From IMG/VR virus record IMGVR_UViG_3300046005_000547, positions 62,001 to 126,000 of that record: DNA of 64,000 bases, one strand, 5' to 3'. The translations under genes were made by a program, and so were the position numbers. The notes under the pieces were generated by a model that did not search any database, was not told where the DNA came from, and saw only the letters and a program-made list of their open reading frames with translations. This document shows positions 46,145-63,900 of the stretch, one piece after another. Position 1 is the first letter of the stretch. Every line of letters starts with the position of its first letter.

Positions 46145-46792
46145 TTGACAGAAGAAACAAACCAAGTGACGCCAGAAGAAATTCAAAAACGAGAATATGT
46201 CAACAAGGAAGAATTATACAATTCAATTGTTGAACGTAAGCGACTAATTAAAGAAGCAGAACTTGATGGTAAACCAAAACCAGCGATTACTCGATACCAA
46301 GCAGAATGTATCATTAAGATTGCTCACAAATATGTCAACAGACCTGGATTCTTTAGCTATTCATTTAAAGATGAAATGATTCAAGACGCTATCTTAAATG
46401 GTATCAAGTATTTCGATTCATTCGATCCAGAACGTTCTACTCAACCGTTTTCATATATCACGGCATCCGTTCATAATACATTTGTACAACGTATTTTGAA
46501 GGAACGAAAACAGACTTACGTTAGACAACAATTAATTAAGAATGTTGATTTGTCTTCTATCCTCGAATCAGAAACTGATAATCAAGATATTGTAACAGAA
46601 TATGTTGAAATCATTAAAGGGTATCAACAATCTGATTATTCAGAGTATTATGAAAAGAAGATTAAAGAGAAAGTCGTCAAGGAACATCGAAATGCATTAA
46701 TGGATTTCCTGGATGAACCTAATACAACAATTCAAGAAATCCCTGAATTGGAATTAGATGAATCTGAAATTGAAAAATTATTACAGGAATAA
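46145..46792 (+). CDS. Late-transcription sigma factor (gp55)
   Basis: YVNKEEL, IIKIA..Y..RPGFFSYSFKDEMIQDA, FDPERSTQPFSYIT, FVQRILKERKQ. Confidence 0.9.
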   Translation: MTEETNQVTPEEIQKREYVNKEELYNSIVERKRLIKEAELDGKPKPAITRYQAECIIKIAHKYVNRPGFFSYSFKDEMIQDAILNGIKYFDSFDPERSTQPFSYITASVHNTFVQRILKERKQTYVRQQLIKNVDLSSILESETDNQDIVTEYVEIIKGYQQSDYSEYYEKKIKEKVVKEHRNALMDFLDEPNTTIQEIPELELDESEIEKLLQE

Positions 46793-55371: not shown

Positions 55372-55854
55372 ATGCTTATAAAGATTCTAGCTACTATTCT
55401 AATCTCATTTTTATCCATGAGTAATATTGTTCATGGTAAATCTAACGGACACAATGTTATCTCTTTTGAACAAAAAGAAATAAATTGTCTTGGTGAAGCA
55501 ATTTACAGAGAAGCAAGAGGTGAACCTGTAACGGGTATGGCTTCTGTTGGTCTTGTGGTAATGAATAGAGTGAAATCTGAGAAATTTCCAAACTCAGTTT
55601 GTGAAGTGACTCATCAAAAAACGAATGGTATGTGTCAATTCTCTTATGCTTGTATGAAGAATCTACCAAAAATAAAAGAATCTGAAAAATTCAATTCGTT
55701 TTACATGGCAAAAATGATTTACCGTAATCAGGTTAAAGACATTACTCGAGGTTCAACCTTCTTTGATATGGGTAGAATGTCTCACAACAAAAAGATGCAT
55801 ATATCTAAATCAATTAAAGTTGGTCCACACCAATTTTATAAAGAACGGGTTTAA
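55372..55854 (+). CDS. SleB/Hydrolase_2 cell-wall hydrolase with signal peptide
   Basis: CLGEAIYREARGE, VVMNRV, FPNSVCEV, CQFS, VGPHQFY. Confidence 0.88.
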   Translation: MLIKILATILISFLSMSNIVHGKSNGHNVISFEQKEINCLGEAIYREARGEPVTGMASVGLVVMNRVKSEKFPNSVCEVTHQKTNGMCQFSYACMKNLPKIKESEKFNSFYMAKMIYRNQVKDITRGSTFFDMGRMSHNKKMHISKSIKVGPHQFYKERV

Positions 55855-56082: not shown

Positions 56083-56298
56083 ATGTTTAATACAATCAAC
56101 GAGTTCTCAATCTTCATTGAATCGAAAGCCAAAGAAATGAAGATTTCAATCATTGATACAATTTTAGAATATTGTGAAGAACATCTACTTGAAATAACGG
56201 ATATTACTCCAATGTTAAATCGTTCTATCAAAGATAAAATAGAACAAGAATATATTGATTCTGGTATGTTACCCAGAAAAACAACTATTGAGTTATAA
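56083..56298 (+). CDS. Late-promoter transcription coactivator (gp33)
   Basis: EFS.FIE...S.IDTILEYCEE...KDKIEQE...MLP; gene order gp33-gp59-gp32. Confidence 0.8.
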   Translation: MFNTINEFSIFIESKAKEMKISIIDTILEYCEEHLLEITDITPMLNRSIKDKIEQEYIDSGMLPRKTTIEL

Positions 56299-56299
56299 C

Positions 56300-56893
56300 A
56301 TGAATGGATTTTCCTTATATTGCTATCATCATTCAATAAAATTACATTTCACCAAAGAAAAATATAACATCTTTACCCATAACGGTAAATCAAATTGTTC
56401 TTATGAATCTTACTTGAAACGTAATGATTATAAAATATATGAAGCAGCTGGTAAATACTTCAAAACTGATATTGAAGCAATTCAATTCATTGCGGCAAAC
56501 GTTGCTTATGGTAACGTAAATTTTATCTACGACTTAGACAAATCTGTTGACAATTATTTGATGTTCCTGAAAAGAAAACAATCAATAACTCACACATTCA
56601 AAGAGGATATAGATAAAATAGAGCTTGAAATAGATAAATTGAATAATCCTGATGTAAATTTATTTGATTTCTCTAAGAAAGCTCTACCTTTAATTTGGAA
56701 TATGTATCTATGTAATCAAATTACAACGGAAACTTTAAACATTCTAAATAACATTAATGGATTCTTAAATGATGTCAATTTAAAACAATTCGACAAAGAT
56801 ATCTTACGAATTAAAAAGTTCAACGGATTCTTTGATATGAATATCGATAAAATGTCAATCATCTATACAAATTCATTGTTAAATCGCGTCTAA
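56300..56893 (+). CDS. Helicase loader (gp59)
   Basis: MNGFS.Y....IKLHF...YNIF..NGK, KRND, ETL.IL; synteny with gp33 and gp32. Confidence 0.8.
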   Translation: MNGFSLYCYHHSIKLHFTKEKYNIFTHNGKSNCSYESYLKRNDYKIYEAAGKYFKTDIEAIQFIAANVAYGNVNFIYDLDKSVDNYLMFLKRKQSITHTFKEDIDKIELEIDKLNNPDVNLFDFSKKALPLIWNMYLCNQITTETLNILNNINGFLNDVNLKQFDKDILRIKKFNGFFDMNIDKMSIIYTNSLLNRV

Positions 56894-56924
56894 AATAACT
56901 TTTTTAAAATCACAGGAATAAAAT

Positions 56925-57848
56925 ATGAACATTGAATCTTTACGTAAAATGCGCAACGCTGACTTCTCTACAATCACAGCTGAATTAGAAAAAATTGTAT
57001 CTCCATCAACAAATCGTTCTGACGATGATGAACGTTATTGGAAACCAACTCGTGATAAAGTTGGTAACGGTTCTGCTGAAATTCGTTTCTTACCTCGTTT
57101 GGAAGGTGATGATTTACCTTGGGTTCGTGTTTATTCTCACGCATTTAAAGGCCCAACAGGTAAATGGTATATTGAAAATTCATTAACTACAATCGGTCAA
57201 GACGATCCAGTTGGTAAAATCAATCAAGATCTTTGGAACACTGGTTTAGAATCAGATAAAAATAAAGCTCGTGACCAAAAACGTAGAACGTCGTTTATCG
57301 CAAATGTATACATTGTTAATGATCCAGCTAATCCAGATAACAATGGTACTGTACGTTTATTCAAATTTGGTAAAAAGATTTTTGATAAAATCATGGATAA
57401 AGCCAAACCGGCATTTGCCGAAGATAAAAGTGTAAATGTATTTGATTTGTGGGATGGAGCAAACTTTAAATTACGTGTGAAAAACGTTGAAGGATTCCCA
57501 AATTATGACCAATCATTCTTTGATTCTCAATCTGAATTATTGGGCGGTGATGAAAACAAATTATTATCTGTTATTCAAAAACAACACCCACTTCGTGAAT
57601 TCTTGGATCCTAAGAATTTCAAATCGTTTGAAGAATTATCTCGTAAGGTTAATTCTGTGTTGTATCCTAATCAACAACAAGAAACTCCAACAGCTGCATC
57701 TATGACTGAAAGTTATAAAGCACCAGAAATTAAATCTGCTACTCCGTCATTTGAATCTAAAATGCCATCTACCCCGAATCCAATGAGTTCTGGTGATGAA
57801 GAGACTGACCTCATGTCGTACTTTAATTCATTAGCTTCTGATTTATAA
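56925..57848 (+). CDS. Single-stranded DNA-binding protein (gp32)
   Basis: DERYWKP, GNGSAEIRFLP, WYIENSLTT, FGKKIFDKI, GANFKL, NYD; acidic tail ending YFNSLA. Confidence 0.95.
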   Translation: MNIESLRKMRNADFSTITAELEKIVSPSTNRSDDDERYWKPTRDKVGNGSAEIRFLPRLEGDDLPWVRVYSHAFKGPTGKWYIENSLTTIGQDDPVGKINQDLWNTGLESDKNKARDQKRRTSFIANVYIVNDPANPDNNGTVRLFKFGKKIFDKIMDKAKPAFAEDKSVNVFDLWDGANFKLRVKNVEGFPNYDQSFFDSQSELLGGDENKLLSVIQKQHPLREFLDPKNFKSFEELSRKVNSVLYPNQQQETPTAASMTESYKAPEIKSATPSFESKMPSTPNPMSSGDEETDLMSYFNSLASDL

Positions 57849-57875
57849 CAAGTTTTTTGATGTAAAATAAACTGA

Positions 57876-57909
57876 TGGAATAGTTCTTAATTGAACTATT
57901 CCATTTTTT
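57876..57909 (+). terminator. Terminator after gp32
   Basis: atggaatagttc-ttaatt-gaactattccat followed by a T-run. Confidence 0.8.
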
Positions 57910-57929
57910 GTAGATAAAAATATGCATCT

Positions 57930-57937
57930 TATAAATA
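57930..57937 (+). promoter_or_regulatory. T4-type late promoter TATAAATA
   Basis: Exact consensus ~30 nt before the PEP-CTERM gene. Confidence 0.65.
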
Positions 57938-57960
57938 TCTACAACAACAGGAGAAATTAA

Positions 57961-58818
57961 ATGAAAAAATTATTACTAGGAATGATGTTAATTGGTTCAA
58001 TCAATTATGCATCAGCTAATACGGTCAATGGGGTTTATTGGAATCCAACAGATGGTTCTGATTTAACTATTGATGGTGGGTTATTTGAAACCATAGCAGG
58101 ACATGTAGGTGACCATATCGTTGGTTATGGTGAAGTGAACAAATTCAACGGAAGATACCAAAATGAATTTTGTCCTGGATGCGAATTAACATATACATTT
58201 TCTTATCAAATGTTATCGTCTAGTTCCAATGCAGTGACATATGATGGTTCTAATACGTATTTCAAAACATTTGAACAAGTATGGAATGGAACATCTATTG
58301 ATTATATTAACAATTCGTTTTTGATAGGTTCTGGTGATAAACGGTCATTTTTCCCCACTATCAATCCATTAGAATATACATTTACGTTTGGTGATGGTAT
58401 TGTTGAATTTTTTGCCGATTCAACTCCAGATTTCACTGAAAATGCGCCAACACTTGCTTCGGCTTCTGATGGTATTAGTTTCTTGAAATTAAAAAGTAAT
58501 GGATTATTGAGAGGGACTGGATATGATATTTTTAATCCAGGCGCAATTTACGGATCTGGTTCGGGATTCTTGGATGCAGTTTCCGGTTCAGCGTTTGAAT
58601 TTTTCAATACAAATTCAATGAATGGTGCAGATTTACAATTTACGTCATCTTTCCATATCAATAATTCGGCAAGAGAATCTGATTATCTATTGGGAGGAAC
58701 CGTTCATGTAACAGGTGATACGGTCGACGTACCAGAACCTTCTTCTATTCTAATTTTCTTGTCTGGAATCTTAGGGGTGTTCTATTTTGTATCCAATACC
58801 AGAAATATGGTAGCTTAA
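57961..58818 (+). CDS. Secreted PEP-CTERM sorting-domain protein
   Basis: Signal peptide MKKLLLGMMLIGSINYASA; C-terminal VPEPSS + TM helix + short tail with Arg. Confidence 0.85.
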   Translation: MKKLLLGMMLIGSINYASANTVNGVYWNPTDGSDLTIDGGLFETIAGHVGDHIVGYGEVNKFNGRYQNEFCPGCELTYTFSYQMLSSSSNAVTYDGSNTYFKTFEQVWNGTSIDYINNSFLIGSGDKRSFFPTINPLEYTFTFGDGIVEFFADSTPDFTENAPTLASASDGISFLKLKSNGLLRGTGYDIFNPGAIYGSGSGFLDAVSGSAFEFFNTNSMNGADLQFTSSFHINNSARESDYLLGGTVHVTGDTVDVPEPSSILIFLSGILGVFYFVSNTRNMVA

Positions 58819-58825
58819 ATTATTA

Positions 58826-58860
58826 AATCCAATTTAGATTAAATTCTAAATTGGATTTTT
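58826..58860 (+). terminator. Rho-independent terminator
   Basis: aatccaatttaga...tctaaattggatt followed by a T-run. Confidence 0.75.
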
Positions 58861-59017
58861 ATTGGATAAAATTTCATACGCAATTTATAATCCTCATAAT
58901 TTGTTAATTACGGACGATTTAAGATGTTTTAATTAAATGTTAATGTAACTGTACAACATTATATTGAATCCGTCTTAAAACAACAAATTTCCATGTTTAA
59001 ATTGATTTTAAAATATC

Positions 59018-59045
59018 TTTCGAAACATCGAATACTCGTTATAAT
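59018..59045 (+). promoter_or_regulatory. Phage promoter TTTCGA-N16-TATAAT
   Basis: Exact motif followed by aga. Confidence 0.7.
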
Positions 59046-59079
59046 AGATCTCAATACAAATTTATTATGAGGAATTAAA

Positions 59080-59358
59080 ATGGCAACTTACCTAACATCC
59101 AAACGTCAATTTGACAAATTGAATGAATTTGAACGTAAAGATGTTCAACAAATTTTAGACAACTTCTTACATAAATCTCATACATTCGTTTCCATTGAAT
59201 TGAGAAAACCTCCAAAAGGTATTCAGATGTCGGTTGTTTATGGATCGTTGGGTATTTGCGAATTTAATATGAAAGAATATATAAGAATGAATAGTAAAAT
59301 CGTTAAACAATCGGTTGCCGTTGAAACCGTTAAATCTTGGTTAAATGAAAAAGGATAA
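59080..59358 (+). CDS. Hypothetical protein
   Basis: 92-aa ORF; gagga RBS. Confidence 0.6.
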   Translation: MATYLTSKRQFDKLNEFERKDVQQILDNFLHKSHTFVSIELRKPPKGIQMSVVYGSLGICEFNMKEYIRMNSKIVKQSVAVETVKSWLNEKG

Positions 59359-59361
59359 ATT

Positions 59362-60159
59362 ATGATTGGTGCTGTAATTGGAGACGTAATAGGATCCGTC
59401 TATGAGTTCGATAATGTAAAGACAAAAGAGTTTGAATTATTTCAAAAGGATTCAATATACACAGATGATTCTGTATTAACATTTGCTATAGCAAAATCTA
59501 TCTTGGATGAAGAATCTTATATTGATAATGTAAAGGATTTCGGTAGAAGATATTCGGACGCCGGATATGGTGGTATGTTTAAACAATGGTTGTTCTCCGA
59601 AGACGTTGAACCATATAACAGTTACGGTAATGGTTCGGCAATGCGAGTGTCATCAGTTGGATTCTTATTTGATACCATAGAAGATGTTTTATATCAAGCT
59701 GAATTATCCGCTGCGATTACCCATAATCACCAAGAAGGAATCAAAGGTGCTCAAGCAACTGCTCTTTCGATCTTCTTGGCAAGAACGGGTAATTCTAAGG
59801 AACAAATCAAACATGAAATTGAAACTCGATTTGGATATGATTTAAACAGAACATTGGATGAAATCAGACCAACATATAAATTCAATGAAACATGTCAGAA
59901 GACTGTCCCTGAATCAATCATATCTTTCCTTGAATCGACAGATTTCGAAGATGCCATTAGAAACGCAATTAGTCTAGGTGGAGACAGCGATACATTAGCT
60001 TGTATCTGCGGTGGTATAGCGGAAGCATTTTATGGGGAGATTCCTGATTATATCTTATCGGAAACATTGATTAGATTACCGCAAGAATTTATTGATATTT
60101 TAAATTTATTTGATGATAAAGTGTATAAATACAATAAATCAAATAAGGAATCGCAATGA
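59362..60159 (+). CDS. ADP-ribosylglycohydrolase (DraG/ARH family)
   Basis: GAVIGDVIGS.YE, YTDDS, NSYGNGSAMR, THNH.EG, GGDSDT. Confidence 0.9.
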   Translation: MIGAVIGDVIGSVYEFDNVKTKEFELFQKDSIYTDDSVLTFAIAKSILDEESYIDNVKDFGRRYSDAGYGGMFKQWLFSEDVEPYNSYGNGSAMRVSSVGFLFDTIEDVLYQAELSAAITHNHQEGIKGAQATALSIFLARTGNSKEQIKHEIETRFGYDLNRTLDEIRPTYKFNETCQKTVPESIISFLESTDFEDAIRNAISLGGDSDTLACICGGIAEAFYGEIPDYILSETLIRLPQEFIDILNLFDDKVYKYNKSNKESQ

Positions 60160-60388
60160 AAACATTTAAAGAATTCCATGAATTGGTCATGGAATCACTC
60201 AACCGATTGATGTAGATAAATTGGAAGAAGCTGTTAAGATGACTGACAAATATCTACAATCAACTGTTAAACGATTGATGATTAATCTAACCAAGTTGGA
60301 CCCAACCAATCAAGTTGATTCTGCATCTTATTACAAATTAGCAAAAATGTTAAATGATAACTTAACTGAATTGTTAAGTCGCAAATAA
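60156..60388 (+). CDS. Internal head protein-like (leader family, member 4); apparent 1-nt deletion near 60197
   Basis: MKTFKEFHELVMES, then in another frame QPIDVDKLEEAVKM...LLSRK; late promoter TATAAATA at 60124-60131. Confidence 0.55.
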
Positions 60389-60437: not shown

Positions 60438-60920
60438 TTAAAATTTAACAATTCCTTCTTCTAAAATATGGAGTTTCAATTCATAAATCATTTTATCAAA
60501 TAGTTCACCAGGAGATAATTTGGTTTCATCTAATTTAAAACATTTCGATACAAATTCTGAACATATCTCACCAGAATAATCTTTAACTTTAATTTGTACA
60601 CCAAATCGCCTCAACAATGATTTAACACCAACAGCAATGAAATCCATGTATCCATATCTAACTGGAGAAATCATGGGAATAATATTGTCTTTATGTTGAT
60701 TCCATAAAATAGATGTATCAACAATTGTGTATCTTCTGTTTTCGTAATTAGACATAAAATTCATATTTCTATTGGATCCCATTGTTGATTCCAAAATGAA
60801 TTTACCATCATCAGAAATTATCCCAACATGTATATATTCACTACCACTAAACGTTTTTATTATCAAATCCAATAATTTGTAATCCCCGTCTTTGAAGAAA
60901 ATTGTTTGACCTGTTTTCAT
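60438..60920 (-). CDS. Permuted papain-like (NlpC/P60 YiiX-type) amidase
   Basis: YIHVGI...ILES...Y.Y...ICSEFV..LSP.EL. Confidence 0.7.
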   Translation of the reverse strand: MKTGQTIFFKDGDYKLLDLIIKTFSGSEYIHVGIISDDGKFILESTMGSNRNMNFMSNYENRRYTIVDTSILWNQHKDNIIPMISPVRYGYMDFIAVGVKSLLRRFGVQIKVKDYSGEICSEFVSKCFKLDETKLSPGELFDKMIYELKLHILEEGIVKF

Positions 60921-60923
60921 AAT

Positions 60924-63900
60924 CTATCCATTAAAATTAAATCTGTTTTGAAAATAATTCAATACAGTGTTATCATCGTTCTTAACTGTCTTGGAGATAA
61001 CAGTCGTTGAATTATTGTTAACATTGGTTGGCGCGTTGACTATATTATTACCATTTGATACATTATTTTTATTGGTATTCTCTAATCTAGCGGTTTCCGT
61101 TTTCGCTGAATTTTCATATAATGCGTTAGAAATATCTCTTATCGGTTTTTCTGGCGTTTTGAAAAGAGCTTGCCCAATAGGTTCAATCTTAGTGACATCT
61201 ATTGGTAACTTTGTTTCAATAGACATATTAGATAATGTATCTGTTATGCTTGAATTAACAATTGGTATTATCTTAGAGGGTTCAATACGTTCTCCGTTAA
61301 TTGTAACATCTGGTATTATATTATTAAGGAGTTCTTCTGCTTTATTATCAATAGAAGAAGGAATATCCATTATCGGATTAATAATATCATCAATTGGTTT
61401 TGTAACAGATTGAATGTTTTGATTGACGATATTCTTCACTTCATTTATCGGATTACCAATCAACGGGTCTATTTGATTTGCTAATTGAACTACTTCATCT
61501 ATTGGATTATCATTTATTGTTACAACAGGTTCAGGAATAGATACTTCATTTGGTGGTAATGGAGTTTCCACCGTAACAGGAACTTGTTGAATCACACCCA
61601 CCGGTTTAACAATAGGTTCTTCTGATTTCAAATTTGGAAATTCAGATTCAACAGAAGGTATTGTTGATTCATTTATTGTTACAACAGGTTCAGGAATAGA
61701 TACTTCATTTGGTGGTAATGGAGTTTCTTTAGATTGTTCCTGTTTAATTTGTTCTACTGGTTTAGATTGAACATCATTTAACGGAGCTTTGCTAAGAGAT
61801 GTTAAATCGATTTCTGGTTTAGAGAATTCAGGAACAGGTTCTATCTTGTTTTCTATTTTAACAGGTTCAATCTTTGGTATTTCTTTATTTTCAGGTTCTA
61901 CTGGTTTTGGTTCTTCCGATTTACCGTTAATGAATTTCGTTGCTTCTTCTTCGACATTCTTTTTGATTTCGGTCATTCGTTCACCAACCAATGGATCTGA
62001 CATTGGTGAAATACCATACACATCTTCATAAACATCATTTGCCAATAATGCGATTGCCGCAGGTACAGCAGTGGCAACTGAACCTAAACCAGATACGGCA
62101 GCCAATCCTGCTCCAGCGATATCTCCTTTTACCAATCTACTGATACCTTCCCCAACACCTAATGCAGCACCAATCAATGGAATAGATTTACCCAACATCC
62201 CGCCCATGGCAGCAGGTAATCTTTTGGCAATAGAGGTTCCAATCAATGCAGAAGCACTTCCTTTCAATTTATTTCCAACACCGCCCAATACTTTACCGCC
62301 AACAGATTTAACTACTCCACCCATCTTACCAACAACTGTTGATTCCTTTACTCCATTAACAACATTAGACGCTAAATTTCCAATAGAAGAACCAGCAACC
62401 ATGGCAGCAGTAGCTCCACCAATCGCCTTTACTCCAGTTGATAATGGTTTGAATTTACCTCCGATTTTGGAGGCAATATCTTTTGTTGATTTTCCAAAGG
62501 ATTTAGCTTTGTTCTTTAATTTACCACCTTCTTTCTTAGCGTTACCACCAAACAACCCACCCAATAATGATGTATCGGATTCTTCTTTCTCATTGACCCC
62601 AAATTTACCCATTTTCAACAATTTGAAAATTTCTGTTTGAACATTCAATTGATTTTGTAATACATCAAATGTTTTGGATTTCTGTAAATTATCTTCAATT
62701 TGAGATTCGGAAACTTCATTCGATATATTAGTTGATTCTTTAGAGGTTTCTTTAATTGAATCAGATAACGATTTGATTTCATCTTGTGTATTGGAAACGA
62801 CAGTTGTTATCTTAGAGGACTCTTTAATTGAATCAGATAACGATTTGATTTCATCTTGTGTATTGGAAACGACAGTTGTTATCTTAGAGGTTTCTTTAAT
62901 TGAATCAGATAATGATTTATTTTCATCTTGAACTTTAGATTCAACAGTTGTTATCTTAGAGGACTCTTTAATTGAATCAGATAATGATTTGATTTCATCT
63001 TGAACTTTAGATTCAACAGTTTCCTTTTTAATTGGAGATTCAACTGGAGTCGATTGAGATGGAATATCTTTAACTGGCTCTTCTTTGACAAATGTTTTAT
63101 CCGTATCCTCTATCTGTTTTCTTAGAGAGGAAAGTTCTTCAGATAATGTTTTAAACACTTCATTGGATTCATCCGTTTTTGGTAAATCTTTAAATGTATT
63201 AAGTTTATCAAACAATTCATTGTATGATTGTTTCATATTCAATAACATTTTGGATTCTTTAATTAGATCTTTCTCAACATCAGAACGTTTTTTATCTTTC
63301 AATAATTCTGGATTTTGTTCTATTGCTTGTTGTGCATATTCTAAATGAGTTTCTTTTACATTTTGTGATTGTAATAATACATCTTTCAAACCAACAATGT
63401 CCGCAAGTTTCTGTATATTTTCATTGGACCCAAACGACAATCCTTTTGTACCAATTTGTTTTATCACAGAAGAGGTTTTGAATTCATTATATCTTGGATC
63501 TTCTTTTACATTATACTTTGGGTTGATTCGTTTAGCTTCTTTAATGTAATCTTTGAACGATTCTCTATTGGATAGATATTTTCCTAATTTTGAATCTTCT
63601 TTTACACCAATAACATTTGTTGCGAATTTCTTTAATGAAGAAAGATTACCAATTGCTGATTTTTTAAACAATGATGAGATTACATTATCCGATTTATCAA
63701 CATCATATTTACCAGAAGGTTTATTTGTTGGTTGTTCTTTTGGTTTTGATTCTGGTGCGTTATCTTTCAAAACGGGTTTCGATTCAATTCTATCTTTAAT
63801 CTCAGATAACAAATCTATCATCTTCATGGAATTGTTGAATTGTTTCTCTTCCGCGAACCTTTCTTCAAATTGAATTTCTTTATCGGATTTACCGCCTGAA

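What the first reader, a model, noticed from the sequence alone, without database searches (positions are those of the whole stretch)
57930..58860. Phage-encoded PEP-CTERM surface protein as a stand-alone late transcription unit
Seen: signal peptide, a beta-rich body and a VPEPSS-TM tail, with its own TATAAATA late promoter, AGGAG RBS and terminator. Known: PEP-CTERM proteins are exosortase substrates linked to exopolysaccharide and floc formation in Gram-negative bacteria (e.g. Zoogloea PepA); to my knowledge they are rarely reported in lytic phages. The tail has only one Arg instead of the usual basic cluster. Inference: the phage uses or jams the host exosortase to change the cell surface, aggregation or superinfection. 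It also hints at the host.
Basis: partly seen in the sequence, partly recalled or inferred. Interest (0 to 1): 0.7.

Follow-up and report, generated by a model that had tools for sequence, protein, structure and literature searches.

The report
Phage-borne PepA-like PEP-CTERM surface protein
A complete 235-kb T4-like phage from lake water carries a gene, taken from bacteria and kept under strong selection, for a secreted cell-surface "glue" protein that normally needs a bacterial sorting enzyme (exosortase); the phage switches it on from a late-type promoter, and its nearest bacterial relatives point to a lake methane-oxidising bacterium as the likely host.

Summary
Window 57961-58818 (+) encodes a 285-aa protein with a Sec signal peptide, a confidently modelled beta-barrel body (pLDDT 90) and a VPEPSS + hydrophobic tail. 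It is flanked by two strong hairpin terminators and preceded by TATAAATA and AGGAG.

It belongs to a proteobacterial family of about 200 clusters. Of 45 aligned members, 43 match NCBIfam floc_PepA, all scored members below its cut-off; only the two phage copies do not match.

The genome is a complete IMG/VR phage with terminal repeats and gp55, gp33, gp59 and gp32. A 249-kb relative carries the gene at the same site, 79% identical over residues 1-268. Body dN/dS is 0.11, as for gp32. The promoter block is identical in both phages, and the terminator keeps its pairing through two compensatory changes. It is not a chimera.

The phage copies nest inside a clade that includes pmoA-bearing, exosortase-bearing, low-GC Methylomonadaceae. 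A 92-97% relative of one such genome is abundant in the three lake runs that hold this phage.

The tail is odd: alone among 162 family tails, the phage copies lack the basic cluster.

What the protein does (surface or matrix remodelling through the host exosortase, or jamming it) is inferred, not shown. I found no earlier report of a tailed phage with such a gene.

The parts
46145..46792 (+). gp55-like late sigma factor (context: the machinery that reads TATAAATA-type promoters)
   Evidence: phrog_234 'late sigma transcription factor', E 1.8e-38
56083..56298 (+). gp33-like late-transcription co-activator; followed by gp59 (56300-56893) and gp32 (56925-57848), as in T4
   Evidence: phrog_254, phrog_269 and phrog_224; PF16805 and PF08804 on the orthologues of the related phage
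57874..57905 (+). intrinsic terminator closing the gp32 unit
   Evidence: 13-bp stem plus U tract; -17.8 kcal/mol, z -6.3
57929..57943 (+). late-type promoter block holding TATAAATA (57930-57937)
   Evidence: The 15-nt block is identical in the 249-kb relative, where an HNH gene precedes it instead of the terminator. TAAATA boxes 20-35 nt upstream of starts precede sheath, gp48, gp25-like and UvsW genes.
57949..57953 (+). ribosome-binding site AGGAG, 7 nt before the ATG
   Evidence: read from the sequence
57961..58017 (+). Sec-type signal peptide (residues 1-19, ASA|N)
   Evidence: Read from the sequence. Aligned with the signal peptides of all family members. No signal-peptide predictor was available.
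58018..58725 (+). mature beta-barrel body with the family's CxxCELT motif and an insert of about 45 residues typical of the Methylomonadaceae-type subclade
   Evidence: AF2 pLDDT 90. Alignment A1. dN/dS 0.107 against the related phage. Best solved folds are 8-stranded barrels, Z 9.6 at most.
58732..58740 (+). Pro-Glu-Pro of the PEP-CTERM sorting signal (within V-D-V-P-E-P-S-S)
   Evidence: P258, E259 and P260 are invariant or nearly so in A1. [VI]PEPSS is kept in both phages while the rest of the tail diverged with indels.
58741..58815 (+). hydrophobic tail segment and a single Arg (58801-58803); the basic cluster is missing
   Evidence: tail dN/dS 0.65
58825..58865 (+). intrinsic terminator of the unit (14-bp stem, then U tract)
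   Evidence: -16.1 kcal/mol, z -4.3. The hairpin is kept in the related phage (-14.0 kcal/mol, z -5.2) through two pair changes on both sides.
59016..59048 (+). non-late promoter of the next unit (TCTTTCGA, 16 nt, TATAATAGA), driving orf92 and the ADP-ribosylglycohydrolase
   Evidence: One of about 30 copies of this bipartite motif in the genome. It marks the boundary of the PEP-CTERM unit.

Best explanation
The gene is a bacterial PepA-like PEP-CTERM protein, a secreted surface or exopolysaccharide-matrix protein that is a substrate of exosortase XrtA/EpsH. An ancestor of two related freshwater T4-like phages captured it once, most likely from a low-GC methanotroph of the Methylomonadaceae, which is also the best host candidate.

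Shown:
- Homology, and nesting inside a bacterial clade.
- Conservation of the position and purifying selection on the body.
- A conserved PEP motif.
- A conserved late-type promoter block and a conserved terminator.
- T4-type late-transcription genes in the genome.
- No exosortase in the phage, and one in every bacterial genome tested that carries a homologue.

Inferred:
- Late in infection gp55/gp33-directed RNA polymerase transcribes the monocistronic unit.
- The product is exported by Sec and held in the inner membrane by its tail.
- The host exosortase recognises it at VPEPSS and passes it to the cell surface or matrix.
- There it changes the properties of the infected cell. It may promote sticking to neighbours or particles just before lysis, or mask or replace the host's own hypervariable PepA-like protein so that progeny or rival phages do not adsorb to the dying cell.
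For: Identity:
- 26 homologues in the word-indexed protein search and 203 cluster representatives at E <= 0.001 in the 50%-identity library.
- 43 of 45 aligned members match NF033554 floc_PepA (best E 9e-21); all members scored individually fall below the 80-bit cut-off (best 70.8).
- The nearest ESM Atlas clusters are named PepA, score 0.97.
- AFDB fold neighbours are PEP-CTERM proteins.

It is truly phage-borne:
- Complete genome with terminal repeats, CheckV 100%.
- Logan contigs from two lake runs (which may be the assembly's own source) span the whole stretch, and a third covers 57362-60200, all with no difference.
- Gene GC and GC3 lie inside the phage's own range.
- A syntenic orthologue in a 249-kb relative is 79% identical over residues 1-268, like its neighbours.

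Selection: body dN/dS is 0.107, against 0.118 for gp32 and 0.114 for gp47.

Origin:
- The phage pair (100/100) groups with P0003 (96/91) inside a 12-row clade (97/88). That clade holds proteins of genomes G233 and G269 and P0004/P0005.
- G233 and G269 have pmoA and an exosortase.
- The NirJ gene on the P0004 contig is 80-83% identical to Methylococcales NirJ.

System link:
- 9 of 9 bacterial genomes with a homologue have an exosortase; the phage has none.
- The Paraglaciecola homologue sits beside an acyltransferase with the Pfam signature of the N-acyl amino acid synthases that the literature ties to PEP-CTERM/exosortase systems, a long TPR-repeat protein and glycosyltransferases (PMC11072679).

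Expression unit.

Host hint: contigs 92-97% identical to the G233 locus occur at word depths of about 485, 22 and 7-11 in the three runs where the phage has 1042, 242 and 18.7.

Surface exposure of the host protein: between G233 and G269 the flanking ThiF is 93% identical, but the PepA-like protein only 41%. The lake population carries a replaced allele of the gene body.

Functional precedent: overexpressing PepA alone restores flocculation in an Aquincola rpoN mutant (PMC9850573).
Against: - No experiment and no transcript data; no RNA run was listed.
- The phage protein does not match floc_PepA directly. It scores only at the threshold for TIGR02595 and below it for Pfam. The related phage's copy scores 13.0, below the cut-off.
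- The Arg/Lys cluster, a defining part of the sorting signal, is missing in both phage copies, and the tail evolves fast. Processing may therefore be altered or lost.
- The complex prediction with a candidate host exosortase gave no answer.
- Late timing rests on a motif. The gene's box (TAAATAT) departs from this phage's commonest form (TAAATAA).
- The host link rests on phylogeny, GC content and co-occurrence in only three runs chosen for holding the phage.
- dS is about 1.1, near saturation, so dN/dS values are approximate.
Confidence: 0.5

Rival explanations
1. Exosortase decoy. The phage copy keeps the recognition motif but has a changed tail, with a longer or different hydrophobic segment and no basic cluster. 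It therefore occupies the host exosortase and is turned over poorly. This blocks sorting of the host's own PEP-CTERM proteins and weakens the exopolysaccharide matrix, which eases progeny release or stops renewal of the surface.
For: - [VI]PEPSS is conserved while the rest of the tail diverged with indels.
- The loss of the basic cluster is unique among 162 family tails, whereas low-GC bacterial relatives keep three basic residues; this argues against mere AT bias.
- In the methanotroph Methylomonas LW13 the exosortase EpsH is needed for EPS production (PMC11072679).
Against: - The body is under purifying selection as strong as gp32. A mere decoy tail would not need that.
- There is no direct evidence on binding; the complex prediction gave no answer.
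Confidence: 0.15
2. Exosortase-independent membrane protein. In the phage lineage the tail has become a plain C-terminal membrane anchor. The barrel works in the periplasm or at the inner membrane, for example in exclusion of superinfecting DNA or in control of lysis.
For: - The tail has relaxed constraint (dN/dS 0.65) and no basic cluster, and the related phage scores below the TIGR02595 cut-off.
- The gene lies near a signal-peptide endolysin and among T4-like early and late genes.
Against: The Pro-Glu-Pro-Ser-Ser motif is kept exactly in two phages that differ at most synonymous sites (dS about 1.1). A plain anchor would not need it.
Confidence: 0.15
3. Virion-associated adhesin. The barrel decorates the particle and binds host exopolysaccharide.
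For: - Late-type promoter, as for structural genes.
- The phage genome does encode a protein with an Ig domain behind a late-type box.
Against: - A cleavable Sec signal and a membrane tail send the protein out of the cytoplasm, where T4-like particles assemble.
- No PHROG, INPHARED or BFVD counterpart exists.
Confidence: 0.05
4. Artefact or neutral passenger: a chimeric assembly with host DNA, or a recently captured gene without function.
For: Host-like genes in viral bins are often contamination.
Against: - The genome has terminal repeats.
- The same context appears in contigs of three runs and in a second phage.
- Composition matches the phage.
- dN/dS is 0.11.
- Promoter and terminator are conserved.
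Confidence: 0.03

Closest known systems
Flocculation-associated PEP-CTERM protein PepA of Zoogloea resiniphila and Aquincola tertiaricarbonis (NCBIfam NF033554)
   Same: - Same overall build: signal peptide, a body of about 230 residues, then PEP + hydrophobic segment.
- The phage protein's bacterial relatives align with the PepA model end to end (up to 70.8 bits), and atlas clusters carry the PepA name.
- PepA alone can drive flocculation when overexpressed (PMC9850573).
   Different: - No family member scored individually reaches the 80-bit equivalog cut-off, and the phage copies do not match the model at all.
- The gene is encoded by a virus and driven by a T4-type late box, not by RpoN and PrsK/PrsR.
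- It carries an extra insert of about 45 residues.
- The tail has no basic cluster.
PEP-CTERM / exosortase (XrtA, EpsH) protein-sorting system (Haft et al. 2006; TIGR02595, PF07589, PF09721)
   Same: - PEP motif about 25 residues from the C-terminus, followed by a hydrophobic segment.
- Homologues occur only in genomes with an exosortase (9 of 9 tested), some inside EPS loci.
   Different: - The substrate gene is separated from the enzyme: the phage has no exosortase.
- There is one basic residue instead of a cluster.
- HMM scores are at or below the cut-offs.
Phage-encoded host-envelope proteins (morons), such as outer-membrane beta-barrel proteins of uncultured freshwater Caudovirales and receptor-masking lipoproteins such as T5 Llp (from general knowledge)
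   Same: A phage expresses a secreted envelope protein of bacterial origin that acts on the infected cell's surface rather than in the virion.
   Different: - Different fold and sorting route; TM-scores to viral outer-membrane proteins in BFVD are 0.3 or less.
- This one depends, by inference, on a dedicated host sorting enzyme.
PEP-CTERM-domain protein HOG10 of the IME1 elements of Dehalococcoides (bioRxiv 10.64898/2026.09.15.751708)
   Same: The only mention found of a PEP-CTERM domain in a virus-like mobile element.
   Different: An integrative, filamentous or budding-virus-like element in a different phylum. It is not a tailed lytic phage, and no relation to PepA is stated.

Membership tests
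PEP-CTERM sorting-domain proteins (TIGR02595 / PF07589) | N-terminal signal peptide | tested here: met
   MKK, hydrophobic core, ASA|N, read from the sequence and aligned with the family's signal peptides. No dedicated predictor was available.
PEP-CTERM sorting-domain proteins (TIGR02595 / PF07589) | Pro-Glu-Pro motif close to the C-terminus, followed by a hydrophobic membrane segment | tested here: met
   VPEPSS at residues 257-262, then an uncharged stretch to residue 280. The motif is invariant or nearly so in alignment A1. AF2 models a helix at 260-284.
PEP-CTERM sorting-domain proteins (TIGR02595 / PF07589) | Arg-rich basic cluster at the extreme C-terminus | tested here: not met
   One Arg only. 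The two phage copies are the only 2 of 162 family tails with at most one basic residue in any 5-residue window.
PEP-CTERM sorting-domain proteins (TIGR02595 / PF07589) | HMM score above the curated cut-off | tested here: inconclusive
   TIGR02595: 16.0 against 16 (20.4 in the six-frame search). PF07589: 15.9 against 20.7. Related phage: 13.0. Bacterial relatives: 17-26.
PEP-CTERM sorting-domain proteins (TIGR02595 / PF07589) | An exosortase encoded in the same genome, or here in the host | not testable with these tools
   The phage has none. All 9 bacterial genomes with a homologue have one. The host is not identified with certainty.
PEP-CTERM sorting-domain proteins (TIGR02595 / PF07589) | Exosortase-dependent C-terminal processing | not testable with these tools
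   The complex prediction gave no answer. Mass spectrometry in wild type against an exosortase mutant is needed.
floc_PepA (NF033554, equivalog) | Full-length HMM score of 80 bits or more | tested here: not met
   No match for the phage protein. Relatives score 35-72 bits.
floc_PepA (NF033554, equivalog) | Homology of the body to PepA-type proteins | tested here: met
   Transitive: phage to P0005, P0028 and P0006 at E 1e-43 to 1e-56. These match floc_PepA end to end, and 43 of 45 aligned members match. Atlas score 0.97 to PepA clusters.
floc_PepA (NF033554, equivalog) | Role in flocculation; RpoN and PrsK/PrsR-dependent expression | not tested
   I saw no sigma-54-type box when reading 57906-57960, but ran no dedicated scan. 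A T4-type late box is there instead. The function needs a bench test.
T4-type late transcription unit | TATAAATA-type box a short distance upstream of the gene | tested here: met
   57930-57937, 23 nt before the ATG. The block is conserved in the relative.
T4-type late transcription unit | Phage encodes gp55 and gp33 | tested here: met
   phrog_234 at 46145-46792 and phrog_254 at 56083-56298.
T4-type late transcription unit | Transcript appears late and starts just downstream of the box | not testable with these tools
   No RNA run was listed.

The most novel reading that the evidence does not exclude
A lytic T4-like phage of a lake methanotroph carries the first recognised virus-encoded exosortase substrate. 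By flooding the host's PEP-CTERM sorting pathway late in infection with its own variant of a hypervariable surface or matrix protein, it reprograms aggregation or receptor display of methane-oxidising cells. The tail without a basic cluster would be an adaptation that changes how the exosortase handles it.
Probability: 0.3. Interest if true: 0.75.

Novelty: new variant of a known kind. Interest (0 to 1): 0.6.

Why it matters
PEP-CTERM/exosortase systems are widespread in environmental Gram-negative bacteria and are tied to exopolysaccharide, floc and biofilm formation. [quoted passage not shown]

A phage copy is a natural experiment on which parts of the signal matter. The body and the PEP motif are kept under strong selection, while the basic cluster has been discarded.

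If the phage protein changes aggregation or surface display, it adds a new kind of host manipulation by lytic phages.

If the host is a water-column methanotroph, it gives a handle on phage control of methane-oxidising populations. It also gives a rare host lead for a freshwater T4-like phage.

Tried and rejected
- INPHARED tblastn with the protein: no match.
- PHROGs: no family.
- BFVD fold search: nothing above TM 0.3.
- Foldseek against the PDB: nothing. VIA-align gave only generic 8-stranded barrels (DUF3224 2q03, Z 9.6; Diels-Alderases, allene oxide cyclase, avidins, small outer-membrane barrels), just above the stated noise level. No function was drawn from these, and whether the barrel is soluble or membrane-inserted is left open.
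- Alignment A1 was too diverse for locus scans. A2 and A3 worked.
- The IMG/VR scan found only this phage (as a 27.7-kb fragment) and its 249-kb relative.
- Complex prediction of the mature phage protein with the exosortase of genome G233: no answer. It is not used as evidence either way.
- RNA runs: none listed.
- pmoC in the phage, as a methanotroph-phage marker: none.
- tRNAs as a host clue: only one tRNA-Met.
- Contigs of P0027, P0028 and P0029 were too short to place.
- A sigma-70-type promoter in front of the gene: the scan listed none there. A weak TTGTAG-16-TATAAA reading is possible but unsupported.
- Literature: no paper in the held library reports a PEP-CTERM protein or exosortase substrate in a tailed phage.
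Full report
**1. What is there**

The window is bases 62001-126000 of a 234,735-bp IMG/VR virus record with direct terminal repeats, rated 100% complete by CheckV. An exact 127-bp repeat is at the ends, and GC is 31.5%.

The ORF at 57961-58818 (+) encodes 285 residues. Read directly from the sequence, it has these parts:
- A Sec-type signal peptide (MKK, hydrophobic core, ASA|N).
- A long Gly/Ser/Thr/Asn/Phe-rich body.
- V-D-V-P-E-P-S-S, an uncharged stretch, one Arg and four more residues.

AlphaFold2, run with a 45-sequence alignment, gives a confident model: mean pLDDT 90.3, pTM 0.82. It is an all-beta barrel-like body followed by a C-terminal helix at 260-284.

**2. The transcription unit**

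- *Upstream terminator.* A 13-bp hairpin plus U tract at 57874-57905 (-17.8 kcal/mol, z -6.3) ends the gp32 unit.
- *Downstream terminator.* A perfect 14-bp hairpin plus U tract at 58825-58865 (-16.1 kcal/mol, z -4.3) ends the gene.
- *Promoter box and RBS.* TATAAATA lies at 57930-57937, 23 nt before the ATG. AGGAG lies at 57949-57953.
- *The octamer is depleted.* There are 5 copies in the window against 12.5 expected, and 11 in the whole genome.
- *Enriched upstream motifs.* Genome-wide, the 7-mers most enriched in the 50 nt upstream of start codons are TAAATAA (12.8-fold) and ATAAATA (11-fold). They lie mostly 20-35 nt from the ATG.
- *Which genes they precede.* These boxes precede the tail sheath, the gp48 tail-tube cap, a gp25-like baseplate protein, an Ig-domain protein and UvsW.
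- *Late-transcription machinery.* The phage encodes the T4 late sigma factor gp55 (46145-46792) and the co-activator gp33 (56083-56298), in the T4 order 33-59-32.
- *The next unit is of a different class.* The genes that follow (orf92 and an ADP-ribosylglycohydrolase) are preceded at 59016-59048 by a different bipartite motif, TCTTTCGA-N16-TATAATAGA. It recurs about 30 times in the genome and is presumably the early or middle class.

So 'stand-alone late unit' fits the sequence. It has no transcript evidence, because no RNA run was listed. The box here reads TAAATAT, where the phage's commonest form is TAAATAA.

**3. It is a phage gene under selection**

- *Independent assemblies.* Logan contigs of two lake-water runs (17,483 nt; both runs may be the source of the assembly) span 56900-60200, and a contig of a third run (4,178 nt) spans 57362-60200, all without a single difference.
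- *Other copies.* A 27.7-kb IMG/VR fragment carries an identical copy. A 249-kb relative carries an orthologue at the same site.
- *Conservation like its neighbours.* The orthologue is 79% identical over residues 1-268 (74% over the full length). Along the flanking 17 kb the two phages share 50-95% protein identity.
- *Selection on the body.* Nei-Gojobori dN/dS is 0.107 for the body, against 0.118 for gp32 and 0.114 for gp47. dS is about 1.1, near saturation.
- *Selection on the tail.* The last 30 codons give 0.65 and differ by indels, yet [VI]PEPSS is kept exactly.
- *Promoter conservation.* The 15-nt block with the promoter box is identical in both phages, although in the relative an HNH endonuclease gene lies upstream in place of the terminator.
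- *Terminator conservation.* The terminator stem differs at two pairs, both changed on both sides.
- *Composition.* Gene GC is 35.0% and GC3 23.8%. Both lie inside the phage's gene distribution (31.3 +/- 3.3 and 25.1 +/- 4.4).

Chimerism and neutral-passenger explanations are therefore rejected.

**4. What family it belongs to**

- *Direct HMM scores are borderline.* TIGR02595 gives 16.0 bits against a cut-off of 16 (20.4 in the six-frame search). Pfam PF07589 gives 15.9 against 20.7. There is no PHROG match.
- *Whole-protein homology is strong.* There are 26 hits in the word-indexed protein search and 203 cluster representatives at E <= 0.001 in the 50%-identity library (70 at 1e-10).
- *Shared layout.* All relatives have the same build, and most carry a nearly invariant CxxCELT motif. 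A few members lack both Cys together, which suggests a disulfide.
- *Link to PepA.* Of 45 aligned members, 43 match NCBIfam NF033554, 'flocculation-associated PEP-CTERM protein PepA', at E <= 0.001; those scored individually align with the model end to end (best 70.8 bits, cut-off 80). Only the two phage proteins do not match.
- *Independent support.* The nearest ESM Atlas clusters are named PepA (score 0.97). AlphaFold-DB fold neighbours are other PEP-CTERM proteins.
- *No solved structure is a clear match.* The best are small 8-stranded barrels at Z 9.6 or less.

The protein is therefore PepA-like. It is not a PepA equivalog.

**5. The system around its relatives**

- Every bacterial genome tested that has a homologue encodes an exosortase of about 500-540 residues (9 of 9). 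The phage has none.
- In a Paraglaciecola MAG the homologue sits beside an Acetyltransf_5/FeeM-type acyltransferase, a 913-residue TPR-repeat protein and glycosyltransferases. That Pfam signature is the one of the N-acyl amino acid synthases that the literature ties to PEP-CTERM/exosortase systems (PMC11072679).
- In the closest relatives the gene travels with a ThiF-family gene and a protein of about 352 residues.

**6. Origin and host hint**

*Phylogeny.* In a maximum-likelihood tree the two phage proteins form a clade (100/100) on a long stem. They group with the metagenomic protein P0003 (96/91) inside a 12-row clade (97/88). That clade is sister to proteins of a Paraglaciecola MAG and of a gammaproteobacterial MAG (isolate F7).

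*Members of the 12-row clade that can be placed taxonomically:*
- P0004 lies on a 9.2-kb contig of 35-40% GC. Its NirJ is 80-83% identical to that of Methyloprofundus, Methylomarinum and Methylomonas.
- In a sample of 301 genomes from the family of a Methylobacter MAG, 9 have a match. The best is genome G233: 44% identity over residues 2-273, E 5.5e-55.
- G233 and G269 carry pmoA and one exosortase each. Their PepA-like loci have 35% GC.

The simplest reading is one transfer from a low-GC methanotroph of the Methylomonadaceae into the ancestor of the two phages. The root is not inferred, so the direction rests on two phage sequences being nested among many bacterial ones.

*Co-occurrence.* The runs that hold the phage are lake-water metagenomes. 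When the G233 locus is laid on the same runs, contigs 92-97% identical appear:

| Run | Word depth, G233-like contigs | Word depth, phage |
|---|---|---|
| X1 | about 485 | 1042 |
| X2 | about 22 | 242 |
| X3 | 7-11 | 18.7 |

This is only three samples, and they were chosen for holding the phage. It still makes this methanotroph the best host candidate. The phage has no pmoC and only one tRNA.

**7. Two unexpected features**

*The tail.* Among 162 family tails the median is four basic residues (three Arg) after the hydrophobic segment. The two phage proteins are the only ones with at most one basic residue in any five-residue window. Low-GC bacterial relatives keep three (for example R-M-K-K or R-K-K), so AT bias alone does not explain the loss.

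*Hypervariability in the bacteria.* The bacterial gene body is hypervariable. Between G233 and G269 the flanking ThiF is 93% identical and the DUF218 protein 73%, but the PepA-like protein only 41%, with an identical signal peptide. The DNA alignment breaks exactly over the mature body. In the lake population the flanks match G233 at about 95%, while positions 1550-2300 of the locus are replaced by about 620 other letters. This is the pattern expected of an exposed protein under diversifying pressure, for example as a phage receptor.

**8. Mechanism**

*Shown:* homology, capture by a phage lineage, purifying selection on body and PEP motif, a conserved late-type promoter block and terminator, absence of an exosortase in the phage, and presence of one in all relatives' genomes.

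*Inferred:* late transcription by gp55/gp33, Sec export, retention by the tail, handling by the host exosortase, and delivery to the surface or matrix.

*Possible effects, none of them tested:*
- Aggregation. PepA overexpression alone restores flocs in an Aquincola mutant (PMC9850573).
- Masking or replacement of a variable surface protein.
- Jamming of the exosortase.

The strong constraint on the body argues that the barrel itself acts, not only the tail. The complex prediction with the G233 exosortase gave no answer and is not used.

**9. Novelty**

- No INPHARED, PHROG or BFVD counterpart was found.
- The only IMG/VR loci are this phage and its one relative.
- No paper in the held library reports a tailed phage with a PEP-CTERM protein or exosortase substrate. 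The one near case is a PEP-CTERM-domain protein in Dehalococcoides IME1 elements.

The protein family and the idea of phage-borne envelope proteins are both known. What is new is a separated exosortase substrate in a lytic T4-like phage, with a modified sorting tail and a methanotroph host lead. That makes it a new variant of a known kind.

Noticed in passing
G000 genome-wide; in the window e.g. 59016-59048, 1601, 3026, 44122, 52431, 53328: A sharply defined bipartite promoter-like motif, AAAATAATTCTTTCGATG, about 16 nt, TATAATAGA(A/T)TTCA. It occurs about 30 times, mostly 20-70 nt upstream of genes. The -35-like box CTTTCGA is unlike TTGACA. It is probably the early or middle promoter class of this phage group.
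   Followed up: partly
G000 genome-wide: The late-box consensus of this phage is nTAAATAA rather than T4's TATAAATA. The strict octamer occurs only 11 times in 235 kb.
   Followed up: partly
L043 (G233) 1550-2300, against L045 (G269) and Logan contigs of runs X1 and X2: The bacterial PepA-like gene body is hypervariable between closely related methanotroph genomes (41% identity, against 93% for the flanking ThiF). In the lake population it is replaced by about 620 unrelated letters, while the signal peptide, tail and flanks are kept. This is the pattern of a surface protein under diversifying selection.
   Followed up: partly
L003 6835-10732; L006 4584-9190; L062 621-3700; L043: The bacterial relatives sit in a recurring cassette: PepA-like gene, a protein of about 352 residues (faint nitroreductase-like hits) and a ThiF-family protein. 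In Paraglaciecola a putative N-acyl amino acid synthase (Acetyltransf_5/FeeM-type) is also present. The phage took only the PepA-like gene.
   Followed up: no
L001 9393-9938 (249-kb related phage): An HNH endonuclease gene is inserted between gp32 and the PEP-CTERM gene in the relative and is absent from the window's phage. It is probably a homing endonuclease.
   Followed up: no
window 60924-63827 (-): A 967-residue tape-measure or gp29-like protein (phrog_167). It has internal tandem repeats (a unit of about 27 residues, repeated some four times, that begins with a Thr-Val pair and ends with a Lys-Glu pair; and a duplicated proline-rich block) plus a Gly/Ala-rich hydrophobic middle. It is only 49% identical in the related phage.
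   Followed up: no
window 55372-55854 (+): A SleB/Hydrolase_2-type endolysin with its own N-terminal signal peptide, i.e. a secreted endolysin.
   Followed up: no
G000:C1:194182-194907 (+), outside the window: A caspase-family peptidase (Peptidase_C14, E 1e-26) preceded by late-type TAAATAA boxes.
   Followed up: no
window 59362-60159 (+) and 60438-60920 (-): An ADP-ribosylglycohydrolase (phrog_6572), conserved in the related phage, lies behind the early-type promoter. A 160-residue protein with a weak hit to a PHROG 'moron' family lies on the opposite strand.
   Followed up: no
window 58965-58997, 59015-59054, 60162-60194 (tables 5 and 8): Short stretches of 33-40 nt here also match other contigs of the same phage at phage-level depth, producing apparent 'joints' with sides of only 21-22 letters. 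These are most likely the repeated promoter elements, not rearrangements.
   Followed up: partly
runs X1-X3: The phage reaches a word depth of 1042 in one lake-water run. A pmoA-bearing, low-GC Methylomonadaceae relative of G233 reaches about 485 in the same run. This looks like an abundant phage-bacterium pair worth a targeted look.
   Followed up: partly
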